From positions 9,176,001 to 9,240,000 of the forward strand of contig NC_087259.1 in NCBI RefSeq assembly GCF_037042905.1: DNA of 64,000 nt, written 5' to 3'. Numbering within the stretch: the first letter of the stretch is position 1; each line of letters starts with the position of its first letter. Made by a program: the position numbers and the translations under genes. This document shows positions 401-43,466 of the stretch, one piece after another. The notes under the pieces were generated by a model. The model was given only the letters and a program-made list of their open reading frames with translations, ran no database searches and had not been told where the DNA came from. This stretch comes from Lytechinus pictus (taxonomy: Eukaryota).

Positions 401-596
401 CGCCATCGGCGGCATCAAGCAACATAGCCCTGCTGGAACGCGAGGCATCAGAAAGAGGACCGCTGGTGATGGTATGGGGTTTGGACCGGTAGCCCGCGGG
501 CTGGAGACTTCGGCGAGATCGTGAGAGGCACCCCTGCGTGCAGCGGGAGCCCGAGTCGTTGTTGTCACAGATCAGAATTGAGCAGTGGACGTAGAC
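401..596 (-). CDS. Gene A exon 31: ZP-C end, furin site, external hydrophobic patch
   Basis: tttcag|[65 protein letters not shown]|gtgagt; 196 nt, phase 0-1. Confidence 0.9.
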
Positions 597-1689
597 CTGA
601 AACGAGAATATACACCAGGAATCACTATGATTTTAAAAGGTAAGACATTACTTTAGGCTTTGATATCCTGATATCAGACACTTGACCTCATATACCAATG
701 AATTATGAAATCCGAAAATAGAGTAGAGCCTAGGCCTAGCCATGTTTTTAACAAATATGGATCTGGATGTAATACAGGTCTCACGCGCGTAAAACATTCC
801 CCCATAGACTTGTGTGTTAAAATGGCACTTAAGAAAAATTCATAAAAAATAAATGTGAAATTAGAGGGTCGAATGTTTACTACCTTTGGATAGGATATAT
901 ATCTGACATTCCATATCTGACCAGAGAAGGGTATCGTAGCCAGCTCATTTTAAAAATAAATCGCCATTTATGAAGATAACTATGATGGGATCAAATTCAT
1001 CAACTGAAACAGTAAAATAGCCCCAATTCTTCCGCCAGTCAAAAAATAGTTCCAAATCATTGATATATCTTCCCAATTTGGGCAAAGGAAGTTCAGTAGT
1101 TACCATTTCTAGAATCAGTGTTAGATTTTGAATCATATTCATACACTTTTGTCAATCAGCAATATCAAATTGAAAAAATTCGAATGGGTTGGGTCGAACG
1201 AATATCTTTAGCCCTCCTGATGTAATTAGGCTCATGGCACCTATATTATATGACCTATGAATTTTATTTTTTTAAATAGCTACTTTGCTATTCTTTTATA
1301 TCTGTACACTCACACTAGCACAAAGAAATGCATTGAAAATGCCTATTTTCTATGCAATGACCCATTTTAATGTGTTACTCATACATGTTATATTCACTAT
1401 ATGGATGTCTACATATCCTACCTGCATATAGCCCAATGGGTGAATGTAATGACAATATATATAGGCCCCTATTCTCCTAGTTATATAATGGTGTATGTAA
1501 ATTTTGTGTAGATATCAGGATACCATAACTGCCCCAAACATAATTACCAGATATACATGAAATTGAATGAGGAAACAAAAGAATGAGAACATATTACTAA
1601 TTAGTACATTTGCACTTGACCTATTATATCAAAATCTTCCTAGGGCTATTGCCTATCAGATGTAAGAAGGAAGAGATACATAAATAGAT

Positions 1690-1724
<35 letters not shown>

Positions 1725-4700: not shown

Positions 4701-7700
4701 GGGCTCTATTTCGTCTAAGATATAGGGTCAGGGTTGCAATAGAGTCTTATGTGAGGTTTAGGCCTAAATCCACGGTTGAAGTTGGTCATTCCATTAGTGT
4801 GTGTGGAATTTACAGCGGAGCAATTGTCGCCGGAGCAAATGTCATGGAACCGGCGTAATAGCGTATGCTCACCCTATCGTAATCACCAATGAAAGCGAAA
4901 GCAGCGATAGTGAATGCCTTGAATGTTGCAGGAAACCCTGCGTATATGTACGTTGTGCTGTCAACGGCACACCTAAAATACAAAAGAAAAGAAATAAGTT
5001 AACAAACGGCTTAGTTCAAATCAGAATGTTAAGAATGGTGCTTTAAGCAATAAACTTCAGTCGTATACACACAGAGGCGAAAATCTCTCCCAATAGGTAG
5101 GGAGGACAAGGGGCTGGAAAATTTTACTAGCCCCCCCCCCAAAAAAAAGGTTATCAACCCAAATTTCGGGTCATCTTGTCCTAAAATACATGTCTTATTT
5201 CGATTTTGAATGATGTATTTACTTCTTACCATCCAAGACCACAAATAGTAGGGGGGGGGGGGGACAATTGATATTACTATTTTGAGTACGAGGGACACCA
5301 ATCTTATTTCCACCCAATTCTCAAGCCATGGCAGTCAGCAGAAACATGTTTTGAAGCAAGAGACAAAAAATCTAGCATAACACTAAAGATTTCGTAAAAA
5401 TGATCCGATGTAAGATAAGAGAGTCATGCCATTTTAGAGTTCACTTAGTTTTCACAAAACAGTTATATGCAGATCTCAGATATGCAAATGAGAGAGTCGA
5501 TGATGTTCCTCACTATTTCGATTTTTTACTGCAATATTTCATTTTTTAACAGAATTGACAATAAGGACCAACATTACTGAACAATTAAATATGAAACAGT
5601 GATAAATTCACATGTCCAGGGAGGATTACAATTTTGTTCTACATGACAATGAGAATATTTTTAATATACTACAAAGAATAGTGAGTGATGTCATCAGTCC
5701 CTGTATTTCTGTACCGACTAGGACGTGAATGTAACTGTTAAAATTCTTATTTTACATCCGATTTTGATGAAATTTTCGTATTATTCAAATCAACTTTTTG
5801 TTGGGGTAAATTGTCCTTTTTAAAAGTCAAGTCCACCTCAGAAAATTGTTGATTTGAATCAATAGAGAAAAATCAGACAAGCATAATGCTGAAAATTTCA
5901 TCAAAATTGGATGTAAAATAAGAAAGTTATGACATTTCAAAGTTAAGCTTATTTTCAACAAAATAGTTATATGAACGAGCCAGTTAAATCCAAATGAGGG
6001 AGTCGATGATGTCACTCACTCACTATTTCTTTTGTTTTTTATTGTTTGAATTATTCAATATTTCAATTTTTACGAATTTGACGATTAGGACCTCTTGCCT
6101 GAAGCAAAAGAATGTTCAAATAATGGAGTTCCACATGTACAGGGAGGAATGAAACTTCATTTCACATGACAATGACGAGAAAATCAAAATATTTCATATT
6201 TAATATAATAACATACAAAAGAAATAGTTAGTGAGTGATGTCATCAGTTTCCTCATTTGCATACCGACCGAGATGTGCATATAACTGTTTCGTGAATTAA
6301 AGCGAAACTTTAAAATGTCATAACTTTCTTATTTTACATCCGTTATGCTTGTTGAATTTTTCTCTTTTTTTTTCAAATCAAGTTTTTGTTGGGGTGGACT
6401 TGTCCTTTATTATGAAACCAGGAATGCACAAGTACCCATTTTCGATAATGTCATAGCGATGATCATCCATTGGGTCTGATGATCCTGTTGCCCAACACGA
6501 CTCGATGAGAAGGGTGAGGTTTGTGACCGAAGCCAGGTGGATACCAAAGTATAAGGGCGTGCGGAGCGTCACTAGTCCGGAGTCGTTGGCAGGTGTTTGG
6601 AAGTTGGAGCTAGTATACCGTTCCATGCGGAGTGAAAACTCACCATATCCTTCCTGGAGATTGAATATGCATATGAGTGAGAGATTTTGGATGAAAAAAA
6701 TGAAAATCCATAATTTATTGTTCGAAATAAACGTGAAATGAAATACTCCGAAAATTTGCTTTGCCCAATTGATCGTGGGCCCGGCAGCCGCTGCGCAGCG
6801 CCAGATCGACGAGGCTCTATCCCTTTAATCGTTGAACGCCAAACAGGATAGCAGCAACTCCCATCTTTTAAAGTCTTTTGGTCTGACGCGGCGGGGGTTT
6901 GAACCCCCGACCTCCCAGTTGTGAGACGGACACTCTACAAACTGAGCCAACACACCGGTTGTAACTGAGCCAACACACCGGATATGCCTTAGTTGAATTG
7001 CTTTGGGGTCTAATGCGGGATCCTATACCAAGAATGTGGGGAGGGGGAAGTAACCCTGGTGAAAGTGACACTTTTTTCGAGACCTGACTTCTGTGTGGCG
7101 CATCTTATTTATCGTATTAAGTAAAAATAGGTACAGGGGAAAATCAGTTAGAATGTCTATTAAAATGAAACACAGGCCAATCACACCAGGAAACACATTT
7201 TGATACTTGAAGCCTTGAAAATAACAAATATTTGTAGGTGGGACATCTGGAACACTTCCGTGATCGTTGACAGCGTTGGTCCGTTTCTGTATGGTTTTGT
7301 GTTCTTATGAGTCTAACAAAGGAGGAATTCGGGAGAGCTATAAATAAAGGGGGAAGCAATCAGTTGAAATATCAAACATGACAAATGAAAAAGTCGATTC
7401 CTTGACAAATAGACGTTGGAAAAAAACCCCGCCAATCCTCTGATTGAAAGTCTAGTCACTGAACAATTTATATACCCATTGTCTATAGGCCTATTCCTCG
7501 ACAAGATCAAACCTTAAATTAATTATTAACTTGACTATTAAAGAAATGTGGCACTGAAAATGGATTGAACTCACCTCGTCGAATACATATTCCTCGGTCT
7601 GGGGCAGGAAGGACTCGCCAAGGATCTGTGTCCTCTTAAGGTTACAAGTCACAGGGATGTGAAGATAGTGTTCTCTGGTAATGATGGTTCCGTTTTCTGG

Positions 7701-10700
7701 ACTAGGCTTGTAAAACGTCACCGTGTTGGTAAATATTACATTCTCTGCATCTTGCTACATGGCGAAATAGGTTTTAAGGAATCAGGGAACAATGTCAATA
7801 GATATCCTGCTTTATACTCCCCCACTACTCCCTTTAACTACTTTACATCTATCAATATGATCAAGGGTATTTCAAATTTGGTGGATATTTCAAAGATTGG
7901 ATTTGTAATAACTGTAACGTAGCCTGATGACTGTTTTATCAAGACAAAAGAGATACAGACTTTAACTTCGGAATATGACCATGTACATTATGATACAAGA
8001 GGGAGGCCCAGTCGTCCCCGTATCTAGTTAAACACCATGGTTCATGGACATGGTGGGCCAGGAGGTATATAACTATCCCTCGAAGGAAACAATTATATTG
8101 AAAAGTAGGTCTGGCAGGAATGTATGAAGACTTTCGATCATCATACCTCTTGTTTTGTGCCACATCTGTTGTACATGGTGGTGATCGCAACATGCTGACT
8201 GTCGTGATCGTATCCAACACAAGACTCGTCTACAAAATGGACATCGCGGGCGTTGTCACCGATCTCTAGAAGTGATCTGTCCATGATGAGCGTCATTGAT
8301 ACGCTGTCGCAGATCAGTTCAGCTTCTGCAATTAGAAAAAAAGTGGCTTCCATACTTTATTAACTAGTTCTTGTATTTCAAGGAGACCATATCTGTTTGT
8401 AGAGAATCCATATATGTTCTCCTGGGTCTCCTCTTTTTTGCCTTCCTATGAAGAGTCTCCCATAAAAGAACAGTGAAGTGGCAGCTCAAGATGCCCTTAA
8501 TACCATGTAATACAATATATGTTGTTTCCGTCTCGATATTAAATATCTTACATTACATGTGTACTATTAAAGCTAACCTCCGTATTACCCCTGAATTGAT
8601 AACTGGCTTTCTTTTTTCTTTTGGAGGGGGTTGTTCATGATAATCATCTTTGACATGTCTGCGCAGGTTAAGAAAATCACTTTTGATATGTAGGCCTAGT
8701 TGATAATCCTGCAGAGGACTGATTAAAAAATACTACGGACGCCAGAGTAAATTGATTTAATACGGTAGCATAATGGAGCCATTGCCATGCAGTACTGCCT
8801 AGAATAACGAAAACAAAAATCAGATGTACTTACGATCAGGTATACAAATAGCACTGGCATCTTCGCCATGGACACAGTTATGATTTCCGAAACCATTATG
8901 CGGACAATTGAAAATGTGTCCCTCATAGCCGGAGCAACGAACGTCATCCATCCAAATAGGACCAGTACCAGATCCAAAATGGGCATTCCGAGGGGCCGAG
9001 CTGGCGTCACTATAGCCCAGGCTTCTGCAGACAACACGTGCATCTAACACGTCCCAAGAATCGTCACATACGGTTCCCCAAAGTCCATCGTGGTACACTT
9101 CTACTCTACCTTCGTGCGCTTCACCACCATTCACAAGACGAACTGTGCATATAGAATAATAATAATATAGGGTATTTATATTGCGCACATATCCACCTTG
9201 TTAGGTGCTCAAGGCGCTCCTATATTACCCGGCTAAGCTAGGCGTTCATAGCGCACACAGCTTTTTAAGGAATTACTTCCTACTGGTACCCATTTACCTC
9301 ACCTGGGTTGAGTGCAGCACATTGTGGATCAGTTTCTTGCTGAAGGAAATTACGCCATGGCTGGGATTCGAACCCACGACCCTCTGTTCCAAACTCCAAA
9401 GACTAATCCACTGGGCCACAACGCTCCATACAAGGATGTATGGAGCGTTATATGTATACAAGGTATACAATGTATACAATGATTAGGTTGAGCAGCTTAA
9501 TATTTCATAGACTAGGGAGGAAAAAATCTACATTTACCAGATCCTAGAAACAAAGTATAATGAGGATATTACGCCGTCCATGATCCATGCCATCAGTCAA
9601 TGCAAACGACAGTACTGCCATACTCTGGACTTTCGTTTCGGCGGCTGATTCCCTTTGCTTTATGCGAAAGTTTAGAGGTTACGCCTAACCTGAGACTTCA
9701 ATGTGCAATTTCTAGAAATATATTTCATTCATCTTTGATGTATAATAATTCTAATATAAAAAAAATCGCCTCGATGGACAAGGAAGTTATGTAAAAGATA
9801 GTGTTCAGATATAAGTCATTGTTGAATACAATAGAAACCATGAACTTTTGTCCAGAATTCCAAATTATAAAATGTAAGTTAATTGAAGTCCAGTACATTT
9901 GATAACCAATAGTATGATTTTACAAGACTTACCTGTCGAAATTGGTATATCAGTAACGTCAGGCGGGGGCGGGTTAGTTGTGGAATCTTAAAGTAGTGAA
10001 GAAAAAATGTAAAATTAACATGATTGATGTATGTCTTTATTTGGACTGCATTATATAAATCTATTAAAAGAGGACAATGCGAACTGCTTCTACCAACCCC
10101 TATCATGCCTCGTGTAACGAATACCTGTTTCTCACAACTTATGAAATAAAATATGAATAGCTAGGGGTCATGGAATGGGGGCGGGTATTTTCCAGTAACC
10201 ATGGTCAACAGACATAAATATAAGCACACTTTTCGAATCGCATCAAATCAAATTTGGCTCAGCCAGCCTACCATTCTCAGATTCTGATAACTAATCGCAT
10301 AACATTCGGCAGGAATTTGTCTCATTGTGTCATTCATAATTATGATGTGCGATCTAACTTATTTACCTTCAGCTGCATAAACGAGACTCAATCGAAGCTG
10401 AAATCCCGTGTCAGTGACAGATGAATCAGTAGTGAACAGCATCCAACTATTTGAAGAGTTTAGCCTGAAAGAAAATATTGCGTCAAGAATATTTACAACA
10501 AAAAACAGTTTCGCGGTTAAGAATATGACTAAAAATATGGTATTTGTTATTATCAGTAGGCGTAGTAACATAATTGTATCAATGTTCTTATACTATTTTT
10601 TTTCTAGTAAATGTATGCTCTAGTATTTATTAATAATAGTCAGAATCCTTTTTAAATCAGAAACAGGCTGAAATATGAGGTATTTAACATGATGTAGCAT

Positions 10701-31224: not shown

Positions 31225-31261
<37 letters not shown>

Positions 31262-34200
31262 CCACACACACCTATATATACATACACACATACATATTGT
31301 GATGCCAAGTTAATGTTTGTGGCCATCATGGTCTTAATTTTGCTTCACGAGATGAACATGAATGAAAAAATATGTTTTCCTTGTGTTATTTGAAGCCCAT
31401 CCCAACGTTCATTATGCTCGCATAACTGAAATAGAACAATGAAGGAATGATTACCGAACATCAGTCATAACACTAAAGTGAAACTACTCGTAATTTTTTT
31501 TAACAATTAGGTTTTGTCAGCAATCTTAAATAACAACATTTGAAATATTACGAAAGTGATGTGGCTTTGGATTCCACAGTGAAGTCCAGTCCTGATGTGC
31601 AAATGAGCTTTCCACAAAAACACAATTTGAATAGTACTTAGAAATTGATACAAACCGTTGCAGAATTGGACATAATCATGACAGCAGTCACCGGCTACTT
31701 GACAGATAGAATCGCAGTAGCAACCCCCCATGTTACCGCATCCACAACACCTTTGGCAAGACGTATCTTTTAATAAAGTAATAGAAAACATCAAAGTGAT
31801 ATTAGCCTTTCTAACGGAATACGGCCCCGTATCGGCCTATGCTACCACTGGCATGGTTTCTTTTAAAAAAGGATACAAATTTCTAGATTTTAATGTCAAA
31901 CGACACATCTAAGAAAGGATCGTGTTTAAATGCAGTTCAAAAAATCTAACGCAAGTCTCTCATTGAGTGTTTCTGGTTAGTTGAATATTATTTTGTTTTT
32001 GAAGTTTGCAGTCACATTTGATTGCAACTCCTTCTGCAAAGGTCACCAGGACCCATCGCCTATGTTTCACATTATCATGGTTATTGGTGTAAATATTTTC
32101 TCTTGTAAAATAATTTATTCTCGAACAGTACGGTCATCATTTCTAGTAATGTTAAAGGACAAGCCCACCCCAACAAAAAAGTTGATTTGATTAAAAAGAG
32201 AAAATTCCAACAAGCATAACGCTGAAAATTTCATCAAAATCGGATGTAAAAGAAGATTTTTTTTTACATTCTAAAGTTTCGCTTAAGTTCACAAAACAGT
32301 TATATGCACATCCCGGTCGGTATGCAAATGAGGAAAGTGATGACATCACTCACTCACTATTTCTTTTGCATTTTATTATATAAAATATGAAATATTCTAA
32401 TTTTCTCCTCATTGTCCTGTGAAACAAAGTTTTATTTCTCCCTGAACATGTTGAATTACCATTGCTTAACATTTTATGGTTCAGTCAAGTTGGTCCTTAT
32501 TGTCAAATCTACAAAAATAGAAATTATGTATAACTCGAATAATGAAAAACAAAATAAATAGTGAGTGAGGGACATCATCGATTCTCTCATTTGCATGTGA
32601 CTAAATTGTGCATATAACTATTTTGTGAAAAATAAACGAAACCTTAAAATGTCATAACTTTCTTATTTTACATCCGATTTTGATGAGATTTTCAGCATTA
32701 TGCTTGTTTGATTTTTCTCTATTGATTCAAATCAACATTTTTATGAGGTGGACTTGACCTTTAATGAATGACGAATGATTCAGCGACACCCCATCTATGT
32801 CTAATTTGAATAATGACACGCACTAGCGTACCTAAGGGGGGAGAGGGGGCAGACTGCCCCCCCCTGACGAGTCACAACTCATGCAGGGGACGTACCCCTG
32901 CCCCCCTGACGAGTCACAAGTGATCCAGGGGACGTTCCGCCCCCCATTTTTTTTGCTTGTCAATGTCCTTTATTTGTGGTTGAAGACCTTTTTTTTTTCC
33001 TTGTCAAATTTTTTCGCGGACGAAATATCCTCCAAAAAATTTGCCCCCCTTTTGGAAAAATCCTGGGTACGCCGCTGAGGACACGTATGTAATTCGTACT
33101 GTAGGATGAAAATCTCAATGCAATCTGGATTTGATGTAAATTTTGAAAACCGGCGTTCGCAAATAGTCGCCCATATGAATAAAATGTCATGTACTAACCT
33201 GGGGTTACATGTATGCCGTATGGATTCTGGAAAGTATCTGAATACTGTAAAGTATAGTTGTTGTCATAGAGTGTTGTGAAGCCAATTGCATCCAGATTCC
33301 AATCCGTCCATGCTATAGTGTAATTATTGATGAAAGCCAGGTCGTAAGGATGAATCGAAGATGTCGATAAATGAGTATCCCTGTAGTTGCCCCAAAGGTC
33401 AGCAGATTCGATTTTATCTGTTGAAGCGTCGCACCAGTAAATTCTGCCACCTGTTGGATGTTTTGTGAGCAGTATTAGAGACTAAAAACTGAACAATAAA
33501 GTAAAACCGTCGCCTGCCAGGAAGGATGCTATTGTTAAAATTATCTCAATTTCCCCGCCATTTTTCAATTGTAAAAATTGAAAAAGCTGTCATGACCTTT
33601 TCCTTCTACCATGCAATCTCGAACTTCGATGTGATGTCAGTATGGCGCTACAGGCTACATAACAAAAAAGACGCGAGCACCTTGATTCCAACGTGCTTAC
33701 GCACAAAGACCGATTCGCAACAGTGACCTTTTTCAAGGAACCGGATTGCACATGTTTGTTTCCTTGAAGAAAGATTATTTGAAAACCGAATCAGAAAATA
33801 TCACTGAAGAAAAAATTTTGCTCCTACAGAAAGTGTAAGAGCTTGGATGGAAAAAACCAATACACCACCAGCAGCTTAAAACTTCGGTTAAACAGTTTTT
33901 CTCAAAAAATGTAGATATCGCGCCCATGCGCTTCAGCGGCCTTTTTCCAGAGAGAGTTTAACCCCGGAAGCATCATTTGTGGACACGTTTGCTATCAATG
34001 ATGTATTATGGAAAAACACCCACACACTGAAACGCCCACCCTCCCATTCACCAAACATACCCACATACATTTATTTTGTGTGAATGACCAAATCACTAAT
34101 TTTGTTATTATACAGCTGACAAAAATGCGTGGAGAACCGATATTTGATAATGAAACCTTACCGTAGCTATTGAGATCCAACCCATTTGGCCAAACGACAC

Positions 34201-37200
34201 TGGAGTTAACAATGACACTTCTGTTCCCGCCATCAAGGTTTGCTCTCTCAATTCGTCCTGGGTCACCCCAATCTGTCCAAAACATCACTCTGAATAAGAT
34301 AGAAAATACTGAGGGTTAATAATGAATATTATTTTAAAAAATGATTTGTTGCTGTACTTTATTTATTTGTATTCTTTTAGAGAATCAGGAACTTGGGCCT
34401 ACTGGAGAACGGAGAACTTAAATCACCTCGACCTCCCGAAGATCCATCTTTTCATATGGATTAAATCCCGAAAATCCTCTAAATGTGTAGGTCCGCGTCT
34501 AGTCTATGTCCTGGTCAGACACACTCAGGCGTGTGTTTGATTGAATCCAAAAACGTGGACACTAATCAGAAACACTTCATGAGAAATGAGGACACCCTCA
34601 AACCTTGGACTATCCACGGTAAGAAAGGTAGAGCAAAATAACGCAAGTACACTGTGCATGCATGTGGCAAAGCAACAAAAAAATAACGATGCAATTGTAA
34701 GTTTTCACACCCTAATTGAGGACCTGTCCCCGTTTAGCAGTGAAATATCTGTGTGTGTAATCATCCACGTGTATGTGTATGGTAAAGAGCGCGGGGGGGG
34801 GGGGGTTTACTCACCCCATATTTTTGTGTACAACGATTGCACGTGGCTTAGACAAGTCTGTATTAATGAGAGTTTCCACGTTTGATCCGTCGAGATTAGC
34901 CGACATGATTTGGTCATAGGTTTCATCGGTCCAAAATATTTTACCACGACCCGTATCCAATGCAATGCCTTCTGCTCCTGATGTAAAAAAAAGAGAGTAC
35001 AAGAAAGATGATTGAAAGATAAGGAATGCAAACAGCAAATAAAAAGCTAGGTAAGGGAAATTAAAAAGTAACTATGAAGATTTTTTTAAAGTAAATATTT
35101 AGGGAGCTCTATCTTGATTTTACGTCTCACCTGCATCAACAGCACATCGGCGGCTTCAGTCGTCCAACAATACGACGCTCTACGGATTCATGAAGTCTGT
35201 TAATCTATTGAAAAACCCATTAAATGACAATGAACAGCTGGGAGGTCTTTGTAAAAAAAATCGTCCTAAGATTTGGAGCTGACGAAAAATGGCAAATAAT
35301 GTCGTTTTTTTCCAGATTCCAGGACGAAACTGGTGCTTTGATTCACCATTCTTCCACAATGAATTATTGGTTATTCATTGTCATGAAGGTTTTTTGACAA
35401 TACATTTTCTTTGTTTTTTTAATACGTCGTGCATCGTTTAGCGGAAACTCCCGATTGATGGAAGACTGAAGACACCGATGTGCTACAGATGCAGGTGAGA
35501 CGTAGAATCAAGATAGAATTGATTATCAAACATGACGCGAATTGAGAACAAAGAAAGAAGCACATCATTGATTCGAAAGGACTAAAAGGTGATGATAGAG
35601 AAGATAACGATAATATAAAATAAAAACAAAATAAATACATAGATTGGTATCGACGACAGTGATAGTGTGGTGATGATGATGCTTTTTATAATGAGAGAAC
35701 CGAGGACCGATTTAGAATTGTCGCATGGGGAAAATGAAAAAGATGCACCGAGCAAAGAATCTAATACAGCCTCAAGAATTCTATTTCTGCCGATTTTCTT
35801 GTATTATCCGACACTTCTGCCGTGGTAACGTTGTAAAATCTTGAGAAAACGATCCGAAGAAATTGTTTGCGTTTTGAGGTATTGCTATCGGAAAAGAAGA
35901 TGGCGGGTTGCGCACGGAATGATTTGATGATCCTTTAAAGGTAAAAGACAGTAGTTGCAGCAAACGATTATTTCATGAGAAAGTCTTTTAAATCAAGGTT
36001 AGTTGTCAAAATATTATCTTAAATCTAGATATGGTACATTAATGTAAACTTATCTTTGTAAAATAATGAAATCCCCGCTCTTGTTTAATTGATTGTTTAA
36101 TAATCATAATTGGTAAATACTATACATATATATTGATTAGAGGTTCTCTTTTGGAAACTGATCACACACATTTACTATTAACTAAAATGACATTGCACAT
36201 GCATACCCTCTTTCGATCCATTACTAATCTTTTGCCGATAACTACATTTTTAACCAACTATAATTATTTCATAAAATTGATAATTCTTAAACCAGACTTT
36301 AACTTTGACTTGTAATTCAAATAAACTTTAAATTGTGCGTGAATCATGTATACCTGGTTTAAAATAATTTCTTTATGTTGACATGTCTTCATCATTTTTT
36401 GTTTTTTTCTGTGTATACATTGTATCTGCATGTGTGTAAACCAGTGAAAATAGAATTTCCTTTATTGACAATAAAGTTATTCAATTCAATAATTCAGATG
36501 ATCACTAACACAGAAAAGCACATGTGGGACATAGTATTATTGCTTCGAAAAATACCCGACATTTGATGGAATTCCGTGCTTATTTTGCTCATTTCTCAGC
36601 AATCACGCATTTTCTTCCAAAGGTATTTGGCATATGATTTATTTATACATACAAACACTTTGGTGGTAATTCCATTGGATTCTGTTCGAACTAATTTGAG
36701 ATCGCCGGTTACCATAACTGGTGTTTATCTTTAAATGACTAATTACTTACTGCCCACAGAACTGTCGAGGATCACGCTCTGCATAGTACCATCAATTTTT
36801 GCACGTCGTATCGTTCCAGCCAAGTCGCTCCAGTACACCATACGAGTTTGAGGATCGTAATCCACATCCAGAGGTTGGTTCACCGACCCGATGGGCAAGG
36901 CAGAGAAGGTCAGAGATTCGAAATCTCCGCTGGAAAAGTCGGCCATGAAGATTTTACCCAGTGATTTGTCTGCTACAAATATCATCGCCTCCGCTGTAGA
37001 TGGCATGGGGAACACCGCAAATTAAAAGAAAGGATTACGAGGATACAGTTCAAAGTAAATATAAATTTAAGAATGTGGCCCGGTTATTGCTACGTTTCTT
37101 TTGCTTACTTATTTATTATTATATATCTATACATGTACAAAAAATCTGAAAAAATGCTTTTCAACAATGCCCTGCTGAAAAGAAATAAAGAAAGAAAAAA

Positions 37201-40200
37201 AAAGAATTACATAAATGATTATTAATATTGTTCATGGAAATAATTTCCTATTGACAAAAAATATATATTATTGCGTAGTCAAAAGCACTTTAAGAAAACA
37301 AAGTTTTGGTTATAACCTGTTTTTGTCCCGTGTTTCACGTCTTTCAAAGAAATAGAAATGGGTTCTAAACAGCATTTTTTGTGTTCTACAAGAAACCCCG
37401 TCGGGTTCTTTATACAACCTATGGGGCTTTTGATGGTGAGTAGGTTCCATTAGCAAAATATTGGGGTCTTTTCACCATCAGGAACCCCGAAACTTTATTT
37501 AGAACTATAATCAGTTTTTAAAGAAAAACTTCAAGAGGTTCAAAATACGGGACAAGGTAAGGTTCAAACATCAATAATCTACTTTTATACAGTGCGTCCC
37601 AGAAAAACGAAACCGAGATTTAGCGATGATTTATCATAACTTAATCTCAAATACAATAGACAAATGACCTACCATTGTAAAGCTTAGAATCTCCTCTTTC
37701 ATCTGAAATTACTTAGGGGATACCAAAAAGTCATTTGGCGGGCTGTATCTGGGTTTCAAAAAGAAAACCACATTTTTAAAAAGTTCAATATCTGTTCTTT
37801 AATTTGATACCTCAATTACAGAAAATGGTCAAGAAATAACAAAGTTCTGGTTATTTAAAAAAAAGGCTTGAATTTCAATGATTTCATAAAATGAAGAGGT
37901 TTTACAGGCTAGCGTTCAAACTCACTCGACACTCCGTTTTGTTGACGACCAGCCATGCATTAATTAAGTCTTTTGTTAACCGTGCGATAGCTTCTGTGGG
38001 GAAACCGGTGAAAGCACGTTTATTTAATTAAATTATGGAAATACAAGCATTGTTTCGAGGGAACATAACTTTTTTACTTCTTGACCATTTTCTGTGATTA
38101 CGGTATCAAATAAAAGAGCAGATATTGAACTTTTTAGGCATGTGATTTTCTTTTTGAAATTCAGACACCCCCCGCCAAATGAGTTTTGGGTATCCTTTCT
38201 TCAATTTTTGTTTGCTCACTCATGCGTGAATGAGGAATAATCTAAGTAATATCAGATGAAAGAAGAGATTCTAAGCTTTACATTGGTAGGTCATTTGTCT
38301 ATTGTATTTATGATTAAGTTATGATAAATCATGGCTAATTCTCGGTTTCGTTTATTCTGGGACGCACTGTATAGCGCTTAAAGGGATGGTCCGGGCTGAA
38401 AATATTTATAGCTTAATAAATAGAGTAGAATTCACTGAGCAAAATGCTGAAAATTTCATCAAAATCGGATAACAAATAAAAAAGTTATTGAATTTTAAAG
38501 TTTAGCAATATTTTGTGAAAACAGTCGTCACGAATATTCATCAGATGGGCTGATGATGTCACATCTCCACTTGTTCTTTTGTATTTTATTATATGAAATT
38601 AGGTTTATTCAAATTTTTTCCTCCAAGAACTAGAAAAATTGGATTGACAACTGATTTATTGCATTAGATATTTATTGCTGCAACTTATTTCATTATAAGG
38701 GAGACATATTATTCACACAAGTATGAAATAATGAAAAAAATATGGTTTTATATAATAACTTAAGAAAACAGAAAGTGGGGATGTGACATCATCAGCCCAC
38801 CTAATGAATATTCATGATGACTGTTTTCACAAAATACTGCTAAACTTAAAACTTCAATAACTTTATTATTTGTTATCCGATTTTGATGAAATTGTCGGCA
38901 TTTTGCTCAGTGAACTCTACTCTATGTATTAAGATATGAATATTTTCAGCCCGGACCATCCCTCTAATATATCAGAACGACGTCTCTTATATATTTATTA
39001 TTACCCCGGTCATCGGATCCTGACATGCCCGCGTAAAATATATGCACTTTCTCCAACACGAGTTCCAAGTCTAGATTGCTAGGCATACTACAACCTACCG
39101 GGTACCCATTTAACACCCAGATGGAGAGCGGCAAAGCGTAGATTGACGCTTTGCCAAATGACGCTAGGCCATAGTGGGGTTCGAATGTACATTCAAAATA
39201 GAGTGAACATTTAATGTACATTAATTTGAAATTAAAAATAAGGTGAAAGATACACAGTGATGTAATTTAGCATCCACTCCGTAACCAATACATAAATATA
39301 CGGTTTGGCCCCGAGTGGTATACTGTTCTTTTCGTTTTTATCTACATCAAATGTATACAGCCTACCTGATACATTGCCCGTCGCAGGAGTTGTCACATCA
39401 TAATCTATTAAATCAGAATTTTGAAGTGAAGAAAAAAATAGAGTAAGAGAGGGAGATGGGGAATTCATCTATTACCTAATCATACAGTTCTATAAGGTCA
39501 CCACTATCTTCACCACTATAAGAACGAACATATAACTCTGTATATATTTGATATCCTGAGGAAGCTTCCAAAGCCAAGGCTCTAAAGTGTGACAGAAAAC
39601 TCACATTTTTGGCAAAGAAACATTGAGGTCCTTTAGACTTGCTTGTGTTAACCATGTACACCTCAGTCTGATTTGGTTAAAGTCAAAGTGTCTCGGTTGT
39701 TATATAGGGTTGCGATATGAAACTGGGATTTCTAAAGCTTGGGTTACCGTCACTCCTGGGGGAAAAGGGTGACTATTTGGAGGAGAATAATTTTCATGTG
39801 CGTGTGTGTGTGGGGGGGGGGGGAGGTGGAGATTGATGATAGCGACCAAAATGGGATGTCATATGTATTCCCCATAAGATTAAACAGTAATTATATTTAT
39901 GCCACGTGAAATTAGTAACCTACCCACTGTGCATGATATAACTTGCGACATGTCTGGGTACCAGTAGCTGCTCGGGTAACAGTAAGAATATGTAGAACCA
40001 TTTGTAGCCGAATATCCGGGAGGACACGAAAACTGAACGTACACATACGATGAGTAATATGGTTGATCTGGTGATACTTCCACGTTTGAATCAACATTTG
40101 GAGGCGGGCAGTCTGTTACAAATATCGAGAATATAATTGATATGAAGCGTAAATTTGCAGAAAATGTTGAGATAATAATTTTGTTTTTACCAAAAGGGGT

Positions 40201-43200: not shown

Positions 43201-43466
43201 GTATCAACAGCTCCCCATGATATGAATCACGACATGCCAAGAACCAATATATAAATTAAAAAAAAAGATAATGAAGGATAATTTTTTTTTCAAATCACGT
43301 GTTTCAGACAAACAAATAATAGCGATCATAACCAATTATTATTTTTCATTCTGAAAGAAACGAAAAAATTGAAATGATGATAGGATTTCTTACCTTGTAG
43401 GGATGGAGCGCATTGCAAAAGGAAAGAGATGAGAAAATAAAGCAGAAACCCCCTCCGGTCGGCCAT
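401..43466 (-). CDS. Gene A (31-exon model, 3'-incomplete): secreted mosaic protein SP-CCP-YWTD propeller-SMB-Trp/Thr repeats-CUB-3xSRCR-CUB-SRCR-ZP; DMBT1-like C-terminal half
   Basis: Exons joined at GT-AG sites with compatible phases throughout; 4567 nt = 1522 codons + 1. It starts at ATG 43466 with a hydrophobic signal peptide. The last exon seen (401-596) ends at a gtgagt donor, so the gene continues past it, probably off the window. Confidence 0.88.
777..2720. mobile_element. 1.94-kb composite insertion bounded by two 465-bp direct repeats (777-1241 and 2256-2720); 4-bp TSD TACA
   Basis: I found one substitution between the repeats. TACA at 773-776 and 2721-2724; TATA at both inner junctions. 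No TG..CA termini, PBS or PPT. Confidence 0.8.
2725..3060 (-). mobile_element. 3' end of a CR1/L2-group LINE (ORF2 C-terminus and 3' UTR)
   Basis: ...[41 protein letters not shown] fits the non-LTR ORF2 C-terminal motif (FF..T...WN.LP..VV....FK). A short atccag-type tail continues on the far side of the composite insertion (~758-772). Confidence 0.7.
3085..3677. mobile_element. TTAA-type (Kolobok-like) MITE
   Basis: Long TIRs aggggaatgaaacctttggaacaag / cttgtttcaaaggtttcattttcct, followed by ttaa. Confidence 0.7.
3812..3960. mobile_element. Small palindromic MITE
   Basis: ccgttgcataaaa ... ttttacgcaaccgg inverted ends. Confidence 0.5.
4666..4851. mobile_element. MITE with ~35-bp TIRs
   Basis: gacattttctccggcgacaattgttcc / ggagcaattgtcgccggagcaaatgtc. 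Confidence 0.65.
4873..4972 (-). CDS. Gene A exon 30: ZP-C
   Basis: ttttag|(G)[33 protein letters not shown]|gtgagc; 100 nt, phase 2-0. Confidence 0.88.
5340..6406. mobile_element. Two adjacent Kolobok-like MITEs (degenerate ~5340-5817; intact 5824-6406)
   Basis: ttaa-aagtcaagtccacc ... ggtggacttgtcct; same family as 32156-32760. Confidence 0.72.
6436..6653 (-). CDS. Gene A exon 29: ZP-C
   Basis: ctccag|[13 protein letters not shown]...[26 protein letters not shown]|gtactt; 218 nt, phase 0-2; CWAT and IIENGC are ZP hallmarks. Confidence 0.9.
6770..6981 (-). mobile_element. tRNA-derived SINE (5' part)
   Basis: A box TGGCTCAGTTTGT and B box GGTTCAAACCC, followed by non-tRNA body; 18-bp duplication of the 5' end. 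Confidence 0.7.
7575..7754 (-). CDS. Gene A exon 28: ZP-N and interdomain linker
   Basis: atgtag|[41 protein letters not shown]...YVFDE|gtgagt; 180 nt, phase 0-0. Confidence 0.87.
8147..8325 (-). CDS. Gene A exon 27: ZP-N
   Basis: ttgcag|[17 protein letters not shown]...DESCVG...YNRCGTKQE|gtatga; 179 nt, phase 1-0. Confidence 0.9.
8834..9142 (-). CDS. Gene A exon 26: SRCR domain 4 (6 Cys, canonical acidic motifs)
   Basis: [26 protein letters not shown]...PIWMDDVRC...HGEDASAIC; 309 nt, phase 1-1. Confidence 0.95.
9155..9428 (-). mobile_element. Full-length tRNA-derived SINE, family 1
   Basis: TGGCCCAGTGG and GGTTCGAATCC boxes; (TTA)n tail; near-identical copy at 44697-44966. Confidence 0.88.
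9933..9986 (-). CDS. Gene A exon 25: Pro/Thr linker
   Basis: tttaag|(D)[17 protein letters not shown]|gtaagt; 54 nt, phase 1-1. Confidence 0.75.
10367..10464 (-). CDS. Gene A exon 24: CUB2 C-terminal half
   Basis: tttcag|(R)[32 protein letters not shown]|gtaaat; 98 nt, phase 2-1. Confidence 0.9.
11835..12090 (-). CDS. Gene A exon 23: CUB2 N-terminal half
   Basis: ttacag|[23 protein letters not shown]...WYITAPSGY...[10 protein letters not shown]...GSL(R)|gtccgt; 256 nt, phase 1-2; same length as paralogous exon 14. Confidence 0.88.
12630..12680 (-). CDS. Gene A exon 22: Trp/Thr linker
   Basis: tttcag|(A)[16 protein letters not shown]|gtacgt; 51 nt, phase 1-1. Confidence 0.78.
12980..13152. 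mobile_element. Tc1/mariner MITE, 173-bp internally deleted derivative
   Basis: TA|CAGTGCGTCCCA...TGGGACGCACTG|TA; same TIR as 37590-38369. Confidence 0.85.
13213..13248 (-). CDS. Gene A exon 21: Pro/Thr linker
   Basis: tttcag|(G)[11 protein letters not shown]|gtacgt; 36 nt, phase 1-1. Confidence 0.75.
13320..13514 (-). mobile_element. tRNA-derived SINE, family 2
   Basis: GTAGCTCAGTCGG and GGTTCGATTCC boxes; second copy at 40615-40814. Confidence 0.8.
14065..14376 (-). mobile_element. Old diverged inverted copy of the 465-bp repeat
   Basis: tctaacactgattctag...ctgaacttcctttg...gtctatgggggaatgt match the reverse complement of 777-1241. Confidence 0.7.
15534..15842 (-). CDS. Gene A exon 20: SRCR domain 3
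   Basis: [26 protein letters not shown]...ILLNHVYC...HYDDIGIRC; 309 nt, phase 1-1. Confidence 0.95.
15915..16092. mobile_element. MITE (TIR ...TTTCATAAAGCTGTTCGT)
   Basis: Inverted ends; related copy at ~50600-50775. Confidence 0.7.
16480..16788 (-). CDS. Gene A exon 19: SRCR domain 2
   Basis: [26 protein letters not shown]...ILLNHVTC...HYDDIGVRC; 309 nt, phase 1-1. Confidence 0.95.
16822..17100. mobile_element. CACTG-terminal MITE, TA TSD
   Basis: ta|cactgtta...taacagtg|ta. Confidence 0.65.
17444..17752 (-). CDS. Gene A exon 18: SRCR domain 1
   Basis: [26 protein letters not shown]...ILLNHVGC...HYEDAGAVC; 309 nt, phase 1-1. Confidence 0.95.
18150..18185 (-). CDS. Gene A exon 17: linker
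   Basis: tcacag|(G)[11 protein letters not shown]|gtaacg; 36 nt, phase 1-1. Confidence 0.72.
18893..18946 (-). CDS. Gene A exon 16: Trp/Thr linker
   Basis: tttcag|(A)[17 protein letters not shown]|gtaagc; 54 nt, phase 1-1. Confidence 0.8.
19409..19893. repeat. Foldback palindrome with CG-rich subrepeat arms
   Basis: Arms 19409-19623 and 19775-19893 are reverse complements built of gtcgcgaatttcgtc-like units. Confidence 0.75.
21486..21583 (-). CDS. Gene A exon 15: CUB1 C-terminal half
   Basis: gtttag|(R)[32 protein letters not shown]|gtatta; 98 nt, phase 2-1; paralogous to exon 24. Confidence 0.9.
21838..23750. mobile_element. TAG-terminal TIR element (Academ-like?) hosting a P-like MITE
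   Basis: tagaccagttcgtagtt ... aactacgaactggctta; no clear TSD. Confidence 0.55.
22959..23696. mobile_element. P-superfamily-like non-autonomous element, copy 1
   Basis: 23-bp TIR CATGGACCTATGAAGAGATGGAC; 7-bp TSD CTCTGAT. Confidence 0.85.
23928..24020 (+). mobile_element. tRNA-like SINE head (related fragment at ~58734-58800)
   Basis: TGGCCGAGTGGT and GGTTCGATCCC boxes; anticodon arm does not pair. Confidence 0.6.
25078..25295. mobile_element. CACAG-terminal palindromic MITE, 2-bp TSD AA (CMC/EnSpm-like)
   Basis: aa|cacagtaaaa...tttttactgtg|aa with long internal inverted arms. Confidence 0.7.
25683..26374 (+). mobile_element. Helentron/DINE-like non-autonomous element with internal tandem repeats
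   Basis: 5' gtttcgcctgcatagc, subterminal inverse tgcaggcgagac, 3' ccacttgtt; related to 51456-52408. Confidence 0.7.
26448..26703 (-). CDS. Gene A exon 14: CUB1 N-terminal half
   Basis: caacag|[39 protein letters not shown]...[10 protein letters not shown]...SDM(R)|gtacgt; 256 nt, phase 1-2. Confidence 0.92.
27115..27536 (+). mobile_element. tRNA-derived SINE with Deu-domain-like core and (TAA)n tail
   Basis: TGGCTCAGTCGG and GGTTCGAGTCC boxes; core cggataggacgttaaatggaggccccgt...aagaacccactggactattcg...aagagtcgggg. Confidence 0.8.
27805..27873 (-). CDS. Gene A exon 13: Pro/Thr/Trp linker
   Basis: tttcag|[22 protein letters not shown]|gtgcgt; 69 nt, phase 1-1. Confidence 0.78.
28422..29142. 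mobile_element. P-superfamily-like non-autonomous element, copy 2 (inverted relative to copy 1)
   Basis: Same 23-bp TIR; 7-bp TSD GTTTTAC. Confidence 0.85.
29203..29271 (-). CDS. Gene A exon 12: tetra-Trp repeat 3
   Basis: tttcag|[22 protein letters not shown]|gtaagt; 69 nt, phase 1-1. Confidence 0.85.
29376..29764. mobile_element. MITE with ~50-bp TIRs between tetra-Trp exons
   Basis: agtaccgaag..tgacgtcagttgccatggtgtcatggcgg / ccgccatgacaccatggcaactgacgtca..cttcggtact. Confidence 0.75.
29839..29907 (-). CDS. Gene A exon 11: tetra-Trp repeat 2
   Basis: tttcag|[22 protein letters not shown]|gtaagt; 69 nt, phase 1-1. Confidence 0.85.
30532..30600 (-). CDS. Gene A exon 10: tetra-Trp repeat 1
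   Basis: ctgcag|[22 protein letters not shown]|gtaagt; 69 nt, phase 1-1. Confidence 0.85.
31061..31105 (-). CDS. Gene A exon 9: linker
   Basis: ttctag|(D)[14 protein letters not shown]|gtaagt; 45 nt, phase 1-1. Confidence 0.8.
31656..31766 (-). CDS. Gene A exon 8: somatomedin-B-like domain
   Basis: (D)[36 protein letters not shown]; contains the CxCDxxCxxxGDCCxDY SMB signature; 111 nt, phase 1-1. Confidence 0.85.
32156..32760. mobile_element. Kolobok-like MITE, TTAA TSD
   Basis: TTAA|aggacaagcccacc...ggtggacttgacct|TTAA. Confidence 0.85.
32821..33077. mobile_element. hAT-like MITE, 8-bp TSD
   Basis: atgacacg|cactagcgtacc...ggtacgccgctg|aggacacg (TSD 7/8 identical). Confidence 0.7.
33199..33450 (-). 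CDS. Gene A exon 7: YWTD propeller blades 5-6
   Basis: caacag|[20 protein letters not shown]...HPYDLAF...IAWTDWN...NPYGIHVTP|gttagt; 252 nt, phase 1-1. Confidence 0.9.
34162..34289 (-). CDS. Gene A exon 6: YWTD blade 4
   Basis: [42 protein letters not shown]; 128 nt, phase 2-1. Confidence 0.93.
34815..34977 (-). CDS. Gene A exon 5: YWTD blade 3
   Basis: [31 protein letters not shown]...[11 protein letters not shown]; 163 nt, phase 1-2. Confidence 0.93.
35939..36730. mobile_element. Kolobok-like element, TTAA TSD
   Basis: TTAA|aggtaaaagacagt...actggtgtttatct|TTAA. Confidence 0.6.
36751..36993 (-). CDS. Gene A exon 4: YWTD blades 1-2
   Basis: [10 protein letters not shown]...[29 protein letters not shown]...; 243 nt, phase 1-1. 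Confidence 0.9.
37590..38369. mobile_element. Tc1/mariner-type MITE, TA TSD
   Basis: TA|CAGTGCGTCCCAGAA...TTCTGGGACGCACTG|TA; long palindromic arms. Confidence 0.88.
38382..38963. mobile_element. Kolobok-like MITE (AGGGATGGTCCGG subfamily)
   Basis: TTAA|agggatggtccgggctgaa...ttcagcccggaccatccct|ctaa; very similar to 49809-50400. Confidence 0.85.
39366..39404 (-). CDS. Gene A exon 3: Thr/Pro linker
   Basis: long pyrimidine tract...taatag|(D)[12 protein letters not shown]|gtaggc; 39 nt, phase 1-1. Confidence 0.65.
39924..40112 (-). CDS. Gene A exon 2: CCP/sushi domain
   Basis: (D)CPPP...VQFSCPPGY...[12 protein letters not shown]...SCTV; 4 Cys plus the conserved Trp; 189 nt, phase 1-1. Confidence 0.88.
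40430..42240. repeat. Degenerate ~110-bp tandem array (GAGCGCGAAGCGCGAGCTGAAA core) in gene A intron 1
   Basis: Core or variants near 40437, 40935, 41052, 41263, 41451, 41589, 41811, 41921, 42032 and 42214. Confidence 0.6.
40615..40814 (-). mobile_element. tRNA-derived SINE, family 2, copy 2
   Basis: Homologous to 13320-13514. Confidence 0.78.
43394..43466 (-). CDS. Gene A exon 1: start codon and signal peptide
   Basis: agcATGG context; [24 protein letters not shown]|gtaaga; phase 1 matches exon 2. Confidence 0.78.

What the first reader, a model, noticed from the sequence alone, without database searches (positions are those of the whole stretch)
401..43466. Unusual mosaic protein: CCP + EGF-less YWTD propeller + SMB grafted onto a DMBT1-like CUB/SRCR/ZP body
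Seen: one continuous phase-compatible ORF of at least 1522 aa joins a complete six-blade propeller (IFVAD, VYWSD, IFWTD, MFWTD, IYWCD, IAWTD), flanked by sushi and SMB, to CUB-SRCR-ZP. Established: YWTD propellers of the LDLR/nidogen type are normally flanked by EGF modules, and DMBT1 is SRCR-CUB-ZP only. I know no described protein with this combination. Inference: a polymerising innate-immune or mucosal pattern-recognition protein, or a matrix scaffold. Automated annotation may split it or label it simply DMBT1-like or LRP-like.
Basis: partly seen in the sequence, partly recalled or inferred. Interest (0 to 1): 0.8.

Follow-up and report, generated by a model that had tools for sequence, protein, structure and literature searches.

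The report
Sea-urchin propeller–SRCR–ZP mosaic gene
One real, spliced gene encodes a secreted or membrane-tethered protein with an LDL-receptor-type propeller at the tip, scavenger-receptor and CUB modules in the middle and a thread-forming ZP module at the base. This domain order was not found described, but it is an ordinary product of exon shuffling in sea urchins.

Summary
On the minus strand, 30 exons with AG/GT borders (43466 down to 401) give one open reading frame of 1509 aa. The frame is still open at a donor at 401, so the last exon(s) lie outside the window.

The domain order is signal peptide, Sushi, complete six-blade YWTD propeller with no EGF, SMB-like knot, Trp-rich Thr/Pro stalk, CUB, three SRCR, CUB, SRCR, ZP module, RSRR furin site.

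RNA contigs from three runs of two studies link the SMB exon to the first CUB exon through five in-frame mini-exons, across six canonical splice joints. It is one transcript.

No described protein or library entry with this order was found. However, a Diadema setosum locus carries the same four propeller exons directly followed by the same five ZP exons and a transmembrane exon. It is annotated as two truncated genes, one labelled "LRP5-like".

So propeller-plus-ZP is a conserved echinoid gene type. The window gene is its long form, with phase-1 SMB, stalk, CUB and SRCR units between the two ends. It is not a DMBT1 orthologue, because its SRCRs have 6 Cys rather than 8.

The function (a furin-released ZP filament displaying binding arms) is inferred. 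I rate this a new variant of a known kind, of moderate interest.

The parts
43394..43466 (-). Exon 1: ATG at 43466 and the signal peptide (aa 1-24). Donor AAG|GTAAGA, phase 1.
39924..40112 (-). Sushi/CCP exon (aa 25-87), with 4 Cys and the conserved Trp.
   Evidence: Pfam Sushi 21.6 bits; borders
37673..37711 (-). Optional 39-nt candidate exon, phase 1-1, between Sushi and the propeller.
   Evidence: only
36751..36993 (-). Propeller exon 1 (MIFVAD and VYWSD blades).
   Evidence: weak Pfam hit
34815..34977 (-). Propeller exon 2 (IFWTD blade), phase 1 to 2.
   Evidence: Ldl_recept_b 43 bits
34162..34289 (-). Propeller exon 3 (MFWTD blade), phase 2 to 1.
   Evidence: Ldl_recept_b 36 bits
33199..33450 (-). 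Propeller exon 4 (IYWCD and IAWTD blades).
   Evidence: Ldl_recept_b 32 bits; PDB matches to LRP4, LRP2, LRP6, LDLR and nidogen
31656..31766 (-). SMB-like exon with 10 Cys; its tail fits C-x-C-x3-C-x5-CC-x6-C.
   Evidence: Somatomedin_B 22.7 bits, cut-off 23.1; no PDB sequence hit; RNA joint 31656|31105
31061..31105 (-). Linker mini-exon L1 (45 nt), Thr/Pro-rich.
   Evidence: RNA joints on both sides; in frame
30532..30600 (-). Trp-rich stalk repeat 1 (69 nt; motif [14 protein letters not shown]).
   Evidence: RNA joints
29839..29907 (-). Trp-rich stalk repeat 2 (69 nt).
   Evidence: RNA joints
29203..29271 (-). Trp-rich stalk repeat 3 (69 nt).
   Evidence: RNA joints
27805..27873 (-). Linker mini-exon L2 (69 nt).
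   Evidence: RNA joints 27872|29202 and 26703|27805 in three runs
26448..26703 (-). CUB1, first exon, phase 1 to 2.
   Evidence: CUB 37.5 bits; PDB cubilin and PCPE; lies in RNA contigs of 3.4-3.6 kb
21486..21583 (-). CUB1, second exon, phase 2 to 1.
18893..18946 (-). Linker mini-exon L3 (Thr/Pro/Trp), predicted only.
18150..18185 (-). Linker mini-exon L4, predicted only.
17444..17752 (-). SRCR1: single exon, 6 Cys, CDHDW and LNHV in place of the acidic sites.
   Evidence: SRCR 99.7 bits; PDB CD163, CD5L, LOXL2, SR-A and DMBT1
16480..16788 (-). SRCR2, 6 Cys.
   Evidence: 99.1 bits
15534..15842 (-). SRCR3, 6 Cys.
   Evidence: 102.7 bits
13213..13248 (-). Linker mini-exon L5, predicted only.
12630..12680 (-). 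Linker mini-exon L6, predicted only.
11835..12090 (-). CUB2, first exon (no Cys).
   Evidence: CUB 41.3 bits
10367..10464 (-). CUB2, second exon.
9933..9986 (-). Linker mini-exon L7, predicted only.
8834..9142 (-). SRCR4: 6 Cys, with the canonical CDDSW, DDV and EDA acidic sites.
   Evidence: 115.5 bits
8147..8325 (-). ZP-N, first exon (Cys 1-3). It is 68% identical in protein and 70% in DNA to the Diadema locus.
   Evidence: ZP-N 19.8 bits
7575..7754 (-). ZP-N end (Cys 4) and the interdomain linker.
6436..6653 (-). ZP-C, first exon.
   Evidence: Zona_pellucida 54.5 bits; PDB ZP2, GP2 and uromodulin
4873..4972 (-). ZP-C, second exon.
401..596 (-). ZP-C end, the RSRR furin-type site (aa 1470-1473) and the [11 protein letters not shown] patch. 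It ends at a phase-1 donor, so the last exon(s) lie beyond the window.

Best explanation
A single sea-urchin gene on the minus strand has at least 30 exons and gives a transcript of about 5 kb. It encodes a large extracellular mosaic glycoprotein.

Shown here:
- The exons, the open frame and the domain identities.
- The absence of EGF next to the propeller.
- Spliced RNA joining the N-terminal half (Sushi, propeller, SMB) to the C-terminal half (CUB, SRCR, ZP).

Inferred:
- The protein is made as a membrane-tethered precursor, with the transmembrane exon outside the window as in its Diadema relative.
- It is cut at the RSRR site just after the ZP module, which releases the blocking patch.
- It then polymerises through ZP-N and ZP-C into filaments, as uromodulin, GP2 and egg-coat proteins do.
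- From the filament core project long arms: SRCR and CUB binding modules, then an O-glycosylated Trp-rich stalk, with the propeller, Sushi and SMB head at the tip.
- The result is a multivalent surface coat or agglutinin. It could bind microbes or particles through SRCR and CUB, and a protein ligand through the propeller face.

Origin, also inferred: a conserved echinoid propeller-ZP gene took up phase-1 SMB, stalk, CUB and SRCR exons in its phase-1 intron between the propeller and the ZP module.
For: One gene:
- Six joints with CT..AC ends on the + strand (GT..AG on the minus strand) chain the exons 31656|31105, 31061|30600, 30532|29907, 29839|29271, 29203|27873 and 27805|26703. They come from runs X3, X2 and X20, which belong to two studies. 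Non-repeat intron stretches have zero depth, so the contigs are RNA-derived.
- All of these exons are in frame.
- Contigs carry about 3.2 kb downstream of CUB1a (3197 and 3199 nt in X2 and X3). In X20 a contig carries 1.2 kb upstream of the SMB exon (table 8).
- The same runs hold both halves.

Domains.

No EGF.

ZP competence:
- The module has 10 Cys and a single R-x-[KR]-R match in the whole protein, placed right after the last ZP Cys.
- The Diadema relative has RTRR and the same KPH..T.GPLS patch at the same place, followed by a transmembrane exon.

Family:
- Locus L001 shares all four propeller exon borders and all five ZP exon borders, at 39-68% identity.
- The donor and acceptor phases are the same.
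Against: - There is no experimental evidence of cleavage, polymerisation or any ligand.
- The C-terminal exon(s) are not in the window.
- SRCR1-3 lack the canonical acidic cation sites, so classical DMBT1-type binding may be limited to SRCR4.
- Both CUBs lack the usual disulphides.
- Contig depth falls two- to 3.5-fold from the CUB side to the SMB side. This could be 3' bias or allele splitting, but a shorter isoform from an internal start is not excluded.
- Each splice link is carried by short contigs through repetitive mini-exons; some have only 23-32 nt on the shorter side of the joint.
- Tissue and stage of expression are unknown. The one raw-read run (X21) shows no exon coverage.
Confidence: 0.6

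Rival explanations
1. There are two neighbouring genes: a secreted Sushi-propeller-SMB protein and a DMBT1-like CUB/SRCR/ZP protein. The joining RNA would be a read-through or a minor chimeric form.
For: Contig depth is lower on the N-terminal side: 10-14 against 23-49. Annotation of the Diadema relative gives two genes.
Against: - Six canonical in-frame joints appear in three runs.
- After the SMB exon there is no stop codon and no terminal exon.
- No signal-peptide exon was identified for the downstream part. The depth falls gradually across the mini-exons, not in a step.
- The two Diadema models are visibly truncated. One ends by a 3-codon read-through of a phase-1 donor. The other starts at an internal Met after the first ZP-N Cys.
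Confidence: 0.07
2. It is one gene, but a non-polymerising cell-surface receptor or co-receptor. The ZP module would serve as a membrane-proximal stalk, as in endoglin and betaglycan, and the propeller would be the ligand-binding head.
For: The relative has a transmembrane exon. YWTD propellers are ligand-binding heads in LRP4, LRP5/6 and nidogen (established knowledge; PDB matches).
Against: A furin-type site and a GPL patch are conserved directly after the ZP module in two genes that are otherwise about 57% identical in that exon. That is the signature of cleavage-activated polymerising ZP proteins.
Confidence: 0.2
3. It is one gene whose product is a structural apical-matrix or egg-coat component with no role in microbe recognition.
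For: Many invertebrate ZP proteins are apical-matrix or egg-coat components (established knowledge). Three of the four SRCRs have lost the acidic cation cluster (sequence).
Against: Nothing tested here speaks against it. It differs from the best explanation only in what the arms bind. SRCR4 keeps the canonical site, and all four SRCRs keep a GR[VL]EV....WGTVC segment that resembles the bacteria-binding peptide of DMBT1 (PMC3100851).
Confidence: 0.3

Closest known systems
DMBT1 / SALSA / gp340 / hensin (vertebrates)
   Same: - It uses SRCR, CUB and a C-terminal ZP module in one secreted glycoprotein.
- Short Ser/Thr/Pro-rich spacers are encoded by their own mini-exons of about 20-24 aa, like the SIDs.
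- The module units are symmetrical in phase 1.
- The SRCRs keep a GR[VL]EV....WGTVC segment (PMC3100851).
   Different: - SRCRs have 6 Cys, not the 8 of group B.
- There are only four SRCRs, and three of them are directly abutted without spacers.
- The order is CUB-SRCR3-CUB-SRCR-ZP, not CUB-SRCR-CUB-ZP.
- It has an N-terminal Sushi, YWTD propeller and SMB head and a Trp-rich stalk that DMBT1 lacks.
- By sequence, its SRCRs are no closer to DMBT1 than to CD163, CD5L, LOXL2 or SR-A.
Diadema setosum locus OZ188202.1:24572573-24597146 (L001), annotated as 'LRP5-like' (P0065) plus a 335-aa ZP protein
   Same: - It has the same four propeller exons and five ZP exons, with the same borders and phases.
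- The propeller is 42% identical and the ZP exons 50-68% identical.
- The furin site and the GPL patch sit at the same place.
- There is no EGF.
   Different: - There is no SMB, Trp stalk, CUB or SRCR between the propeller and the ZP module, only a candidate 45-nt Thr/Pro linker.
- No Sushi exon was found within 10 kb upstream.
- Its last exon, with a transmembrane helix, is visible, whereas ours lies outside the window.
Uromodulin / GP2 (polymerising ZP proteins)
   Same: It has a C-terminal ZP module followed by a furin-type site and a hydrophobic patch, with N-terminal domains that would project from a filament. The ZP-C exon matches ZP2, GP2 and UMOD weakly.
   Different: The arms are made of quite different domains, and sequence similarity is low (E 2e-4 to 7e-3).
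LDLR/LRP/nidogen YWTD propellers
   Same: It is a six-blade, roughly 260-aa propeller, collinear with the solved ones.
   Different: It has no EGF module before or after it; Sushi and an SMB-like knot flank it instead. EGF-less propellers also exist in Acanthaster (P0177), and earlier notes report them in this genome.
Echinoderm SRCR superfamily models (PMC10855680, Table S6)
   Same: The Acanthaster set contains SRCR-ZP-TM (Apl087) and YWTD-EGF-SRCRn-Sushi/EGF-TM (Apl093), so the pairwise combinations are already catalogued.
   Different: No Acanthaster SRCR protein combines YWTD with ZP: PF00100 occurs in only one of them, and that one has no PF00058. The sea-urchin part of that table is not held in the stored copy.

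Membership tests
DMBT1 orthologue group | Group B SRCR domains (8 Cys, single exon) | tested here: not met
   Each of the four SRCR exons has 6 Cys. They are single-exon. The definition is from PMC3100851.
DMBT1 orthologue group | Tandem SRCR-SID array | tested here: not met
   SRCR1-3 follow each other with no spacer exon. Thr/Pro mini-exons exist, but they flank the CUBs and the stalk.
DMBT1 orthologue group | SRCR, CUB and C-terminal ZP in one polypeptide | tested here: met
   The order differs from human DMBT1.
Polymerising ZP-module proteins | ZP-N plus ZP-C with the conserved cysteines | tested here: met
   There are 4 Cys in ZP-N and 6 in ZP-C. Pfam gives ZP-C 54.5 bits and ZP-N 19.8 bits, the latter sub-threshold on a single exon.
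Polymerising ZP-module proteins | Consensus furin cleavage site after ZP-C | tested here: met
   RSRR at aa 1470 is the only R-x-[KR]-R match in the protein. The Diadema relative has RTRR at the same place.
Polymerising ZP-module proteins | External hydrophobic patch after the cleavage site | tested here: inconclusive
   [11 protein letters not shown] is conserved against KPHAVTNGPLS in Diadema. It is judged only by its resemblance to GP(L/I) patches of known ZP proteins, recalled from memory.
Polymerising ZP-module proteins | C-terminal membrane anchor | not testable with these tools
   The frame is open at the donor at 401. About 405 nt of transcript lie beyond the window (table 8). The relative has a transmembrane exon.
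Polymerising ZP-module proteins | Filament formation | not testable with these tools
   This needs expression and electron microscopy.
LDLR-type YWTD beta-propeller | Six YWTD-type blades in about 260 aa | tested here: met
LDLR-type YWTD beta-propeller | Flanking EGF modules (the usual YWTD-EGF unit) | tested here: not met
   There is no EGF Pfam hit on the flanking exons and no EGF-like Cys pattern between 31000 and 44000.
Somatomedin B domain | 8-Cys knot matching PF01033 above its cut-off | tested here: inconclusive
   It scores 22.7 bits against a cut-off of 23.1, over the full profile length. It has 10 Cys and no PDB sequence hit.

The most novel reading that the evidence does not exclude
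Echinoids possess a so far undescribed family of filament-forming ZP proteins whose exposed head is an EGF-less YWTD propeller. The window gene would be its elaborated member. It would carry SRCR and CUB recognition modules and a tetra-tryptophan stalk, possibly C-mannosylated and O-glycosylated, and would form a polymeric surface net that couples microbe or particle capture to a specific propeller ligand.
Probability: 0.3. Interest if true: 0.55.

Novelty: new variant of a known kind. Interest (0 to 1): 0.4.

Why it matters
- It is a clean, RNA-supported example of exon shuffling. Phase-1 modules sit inside a conserved propeller-ZP gene.
- It shows that YWTD propellers can work without EGF partners at the tip of a ZP protein.
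- It flags a gene type that current annotation splits and mislabels as "LRP5-like".
- If the product does polymerise, it offers a simple system to ask how ZP filaments display large binding arms, and what an orphan propeller binds in an invertebrate surface coat.
- It does not open a long-standing question. Sea-urchin SRCR genes are already known for very diverse domain partners (PMC10855680).

Tried and rejected
- Representative-library search with the blade 5-6 exon. No hit exceeded 46% identity, and the top ranks went to multi-propeller LRP-like proteins. Nine candidates were scanned and none had SRCR, CUB or ZP. A local phmmer of the other domains against all 150 hits found nothing.
- Full-length homologue search. 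A search with the Diadema propeller returned only LRP-like fragments and no Sushi-propeller-SMB model.
- Acanthaster P0177, a stand-alone EGF-less propeller. Its neighbour is a GPCR, not a ZP gene, so it is not evidence for the family in sea stars.
- Table S6 of PMC10855680. It took six look-ups to find that the only Acanthaster SRCR-ZP model lacks YWTD. The sea-urchin rows are cut off in the stored file.
- Literature searches for the combination. They found only DMBT1 papers and general surveys.
- Rfam and tRNA scans. They found nothing relevant to the gene.
- Structure prediction of the propeller-SMB unit. It was left out because the spliced sequence cannot be given by reference.
- Sushi exon upstream of the Diadema propeller. 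None was found within 10 kb.

Full report
**What is in the sequence**

- a start codon and signal peptide at 43466;
- a Sushi exon near 40112;
- four exons with MIFVAD, VYWSD, IFWTD, MFWTD, IYWCD and IAWTD between 36993 and 33199;
- a cysteine knot at 31766-31656;
- two CUB domains, each split over two exons;
- four single-exon SRCR domains;
- five ZP exons ending at a donor at 401.

I chose acceptors and donors by phase. Assembling them gave 30 exons, all AG...GT, with 4528 nt, 1509 codons and no stop. The frame is still open at 401, so the gene continues beyond the window.

That equals a 39-nt phase-1 candidate exon at 37673-37711, which I could not verify.

**Domain identities**

Pfam exon by exon:

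| Domain | Score | Note |
|---|---|---|
| Sushi | 21.6 bits | above cut-off |
| Ldl_recept_b | 43, 36, 32 bits | three propeller exons |
| Somatomedin_B | 22.7 bits | full profile length, just under the 23.1 cut-off |
| CUB | 37.5, 41.3 bits | |
| SRCR | 99-115 bits | four exons |
| ZP-N | 19.8 bits | under cut-off |
| ZP-C | 54.5 bits | |

Sequence matches to solved structures:
- The last propeller exon matches blades 5-6 of LRP4, LRP2, LRP6, LDLR and nidogen.
- SRCR1 matches CD163, CD5L, LOXL2, SR-A, Mac-2BP and DMBT1 about equally per domain.
- The ZP-C exon matches ZP2, GP2 and uromodulin weakly.
- CUB1 matches cubilin, PCPE, C1s and neuropilin.
- The SMB-like exon has no PDB sequence match.

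The 262-aa propeller aligns end to end with a 265-aa propeller protein, so it is complete.

A regular-expression scan of all three minus-strand frames between 31000 and 44000 found no EGF-like cysteine pattern. The only cysteine-dense stretch was the SMB exon. The propeller is therefore truly EGF-less.

**One gene or two**

- Runs X2, X3 and X20 hold both the propeller exons (share 0.15-0.20, equal to the exonic fraction of the query) and the first CUB exon (0.87-1.00).
- Laying them on 26300-32000 gave six joints, each with CT..AC ends on the + strand, which is GT..AG on the minus strand. The joints are 31656|31105, 31061|30600, 30531|29906, 29838|29270, 29202|27872 and 27805|26703; three of them fit equally well one base further on.
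- They define five mini-exons of 45, 69, 69, 69 and 69 nt with canonical borders. These keep the frame from the SMB exon into CUB1.
- Non-repeat intron stretches have zero depth in these runs, so the contigs come from RNA.
- In X3 and X2 the contig holding CUB1a runs 3199 and 3197 nt further downstream. My model accounts for 2792 nt down to 401. That leaves about 405 nt for a last exon and 3' UTR.
- In X20 the contig holding the SMB exon runs 1216 nt further upstream. That is enough for the propeller (786 nt), the Sushi exon (189 nt) and exon 1.

The refutation test therefore fails, and the two halves belong to one spliced transcript.

Caveats:
- The chain is assembled from several short contigs that break in the repetitive mini-exons.
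- Depth falls from 23-49 on the CUB side to 10-14 on the SMB side. The fall is gradual, and X2 has two allelic SMB contigs, so 3' bias and allele splitting are likely causes. A shorter isoform is not excluded.
- Mini-exons L3-L7 are predictions.

**The Trp-rich stalk**

The five RNA-supported mini-exons encode a Thr/Pro-rich segment of 107 aa with 19 Trp. It includes three 23-aa repeats containing [14 protein letters not shown].

One search shows that they are real exons of this gene. They resemble DMBT1's SID spacers in size, composition and one-exon-per-unit coding (PMC3100851), but the tetra-Trp runs are unusual.

**ZP module**
- ZP-N has four Cys and ZP-C has six.
- The only R-x-[KR]-R match in the protein, RSRR, lies seven residues after the last ZP Cys. 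It is followed by [11 protein letters not shown].
- These are the features of ZP precursors that are cleaved to start polymerisation (established knowledge for uromodulin and the egg-coat proteins). The anchor itself is outside the window.

**A relative that changes the history**

The best single-propeller match, P0065, is named "LRP5-like" from Diadema setosum. The assembly is identified by PMC13264686.

Its locus L001 holds a second gene model 1.4 kb downstream, on the same strand, with ZP-N and ZP-C. A tblastn of my model on L001 shows the following:
- Four propeller exons have the same borders as ours (39-50% identity).
- Five ZP exons have the same borders (50-68% identity).
- Nothing matches the SMB, CUB or SRCR domains.

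Details of the Diadema models:
- The propeller model ends by reading three codons into an intron past a CAG|GTATAT phase-1 donor.
- The ZP model starts at an internal Met, just after the first ZP-N Cys and behind a phase-1 acceptor.
- A 45-nt Thr/Pro candidate mini-exon lies between the two models.
- The ZP part carries RTRR and KPHAVTNGPLS at the same positions as ours.
- Its last exon encodes a transmembrane helix and a short tail.

The two models are best read as one propeller-ZP-TM gene split by the annotator.

The pairing of an EGF-less propeller with a ZP module is thus conserved between two sea-urchin genes. The window gene differs by units that are all symmetrical in phase 1: SMB, mini-exons, CUB exon pairs and SRCR exons. 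They lie in what is a phase-1 intron in the short form. This fits classical exon shuffling into a propeller-ZP gene, or loss of the cassette in the short form. It fits less well with a propeller grafted onto a DMBT1-like gene.

Another note names the species as Lytechinus pictus. I did not verify that. L001 and the window share only the first ZP exon at DNA level (70% identity), so they are distinct loci and probably distinct species.

**Is it catalogued?**
- No paper in the library holds the combination.
- The 2024 survey of SRCR genes reports 123 partner domains (PMC10855680).
- Its Acanthaster table has SRCR-ZP-TM (Apl087) and YWTD-EGF-SRCRn (Apl093). PF00100 occurs in only one Acanthaster entry, and that entry has no PF00058. 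The sea-urchin rows are not in the stored copy.
- The representative library of 1.84 billion proteins has no entry above 46% identity to the blade 5-6 exon. Neither this gene's N-terminal part nor a close orthologue seems to be present there.
- I could not run an architecture search on full-length proteins.

**Relation to DMBT1**

The gene shares the domain vocabulary and the spacer mini-exons. It fails the defining SRCR type (6 Cys rather than 8) and the SRCR-SID array, and the domain order differs. It is DMBT1-like in design, not a DMBT1 family member.

SRCR1-3 read CDH.W and LNHV where SRCR4 and DMBT1 have CDD.W and DDV. Canonical cation-dependent binding may therefore be confined to SRCR4.

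**Mechanism and verdict**

Shown: one gene, its exons and domains, the spliced RNA, and a conserved relative.

Inferred: a membrane-tethered precursor is cut at RSRR and assembles through its ZP module into filaments. The arms of those filaments present SRCR and CUB modules, with the propeller head on a glycosylated stalk.

Whether it serves defence, particle capture or matrix structure is open.

Sea-urchin genomes are known for such mosaics, so this is a new variant of a known kind. The modest added value is that it uncovers a conserved, mis-annotated propeller-ZP gene type.

Noticed in passing
window 27805-31105 (minus strand): The tetra-tryptophan mini-exons noted separately (s1-329242) are real exons of this gene. 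There are five in-frame units, each with canonical splice joints in RNA contigs from three runs. Three of them are 23-aa repeats containing [14 protein letters not shown].
   Followed up: yes
window 17444-17752, 16480-16788, 15534-15842 and 8834-9142: SRCR1-3 carry CDH.W and LNHV where SRCR4 keeps the canonical acidic CDD.W and DDV. This agrees with note s1-329277. The His/Asn replacements could mean a different metal or ligand preference.
   Followed up: partly
window 27064-27636 and 26300-26490: An intronic repeat has very high RNA depth in the rRNA-depleted run X21 (up to about 2900 on one strand), while the gene's exons have none. Nearly all reads differ from the window at fixed sites, so they come from other copies. 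Many molecules end at 27126. There is no Rfam match.
   Followed up: partly
window 6884-6956 (minus strand): A tRNA-like element (Rfam tRNA, 34.4 bits) that ARAGORN does not call. It lies in the intron between ZP exons and is probably the head of a tRNA-derived SINE. Similar SINE-like ORF fragments recur at about 9300-9500 and 44800-45160.
   Followed up: no
window 677-1151 and 2198-2630: Two near-identical copies of a repeat, with identical 68-aa and similar 77/91-aa stop-free stretches, lie in the last intron. They match the 'cointegrate-like insertion' noted as s1-329253.
   Followed up: no
L001 10001-22521 (Diadema setosum OZ188202.1): The public annotation splits what looks like one propeller-ZP-TM gene into two truncated models. 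The first is named 'LRP5-like'. Its start codon is a 2-codon exon and its stop is an intron read-through.
   Followed up: yes
L002 10001-18072 (Acanthaster planci DF978554.1): A stand-alone EGF-less YWTD propeller gene has the same four-exon layout as the window's propeller. Its neighbour is a GPCR, not a ZP gene.
   Followed up: partly
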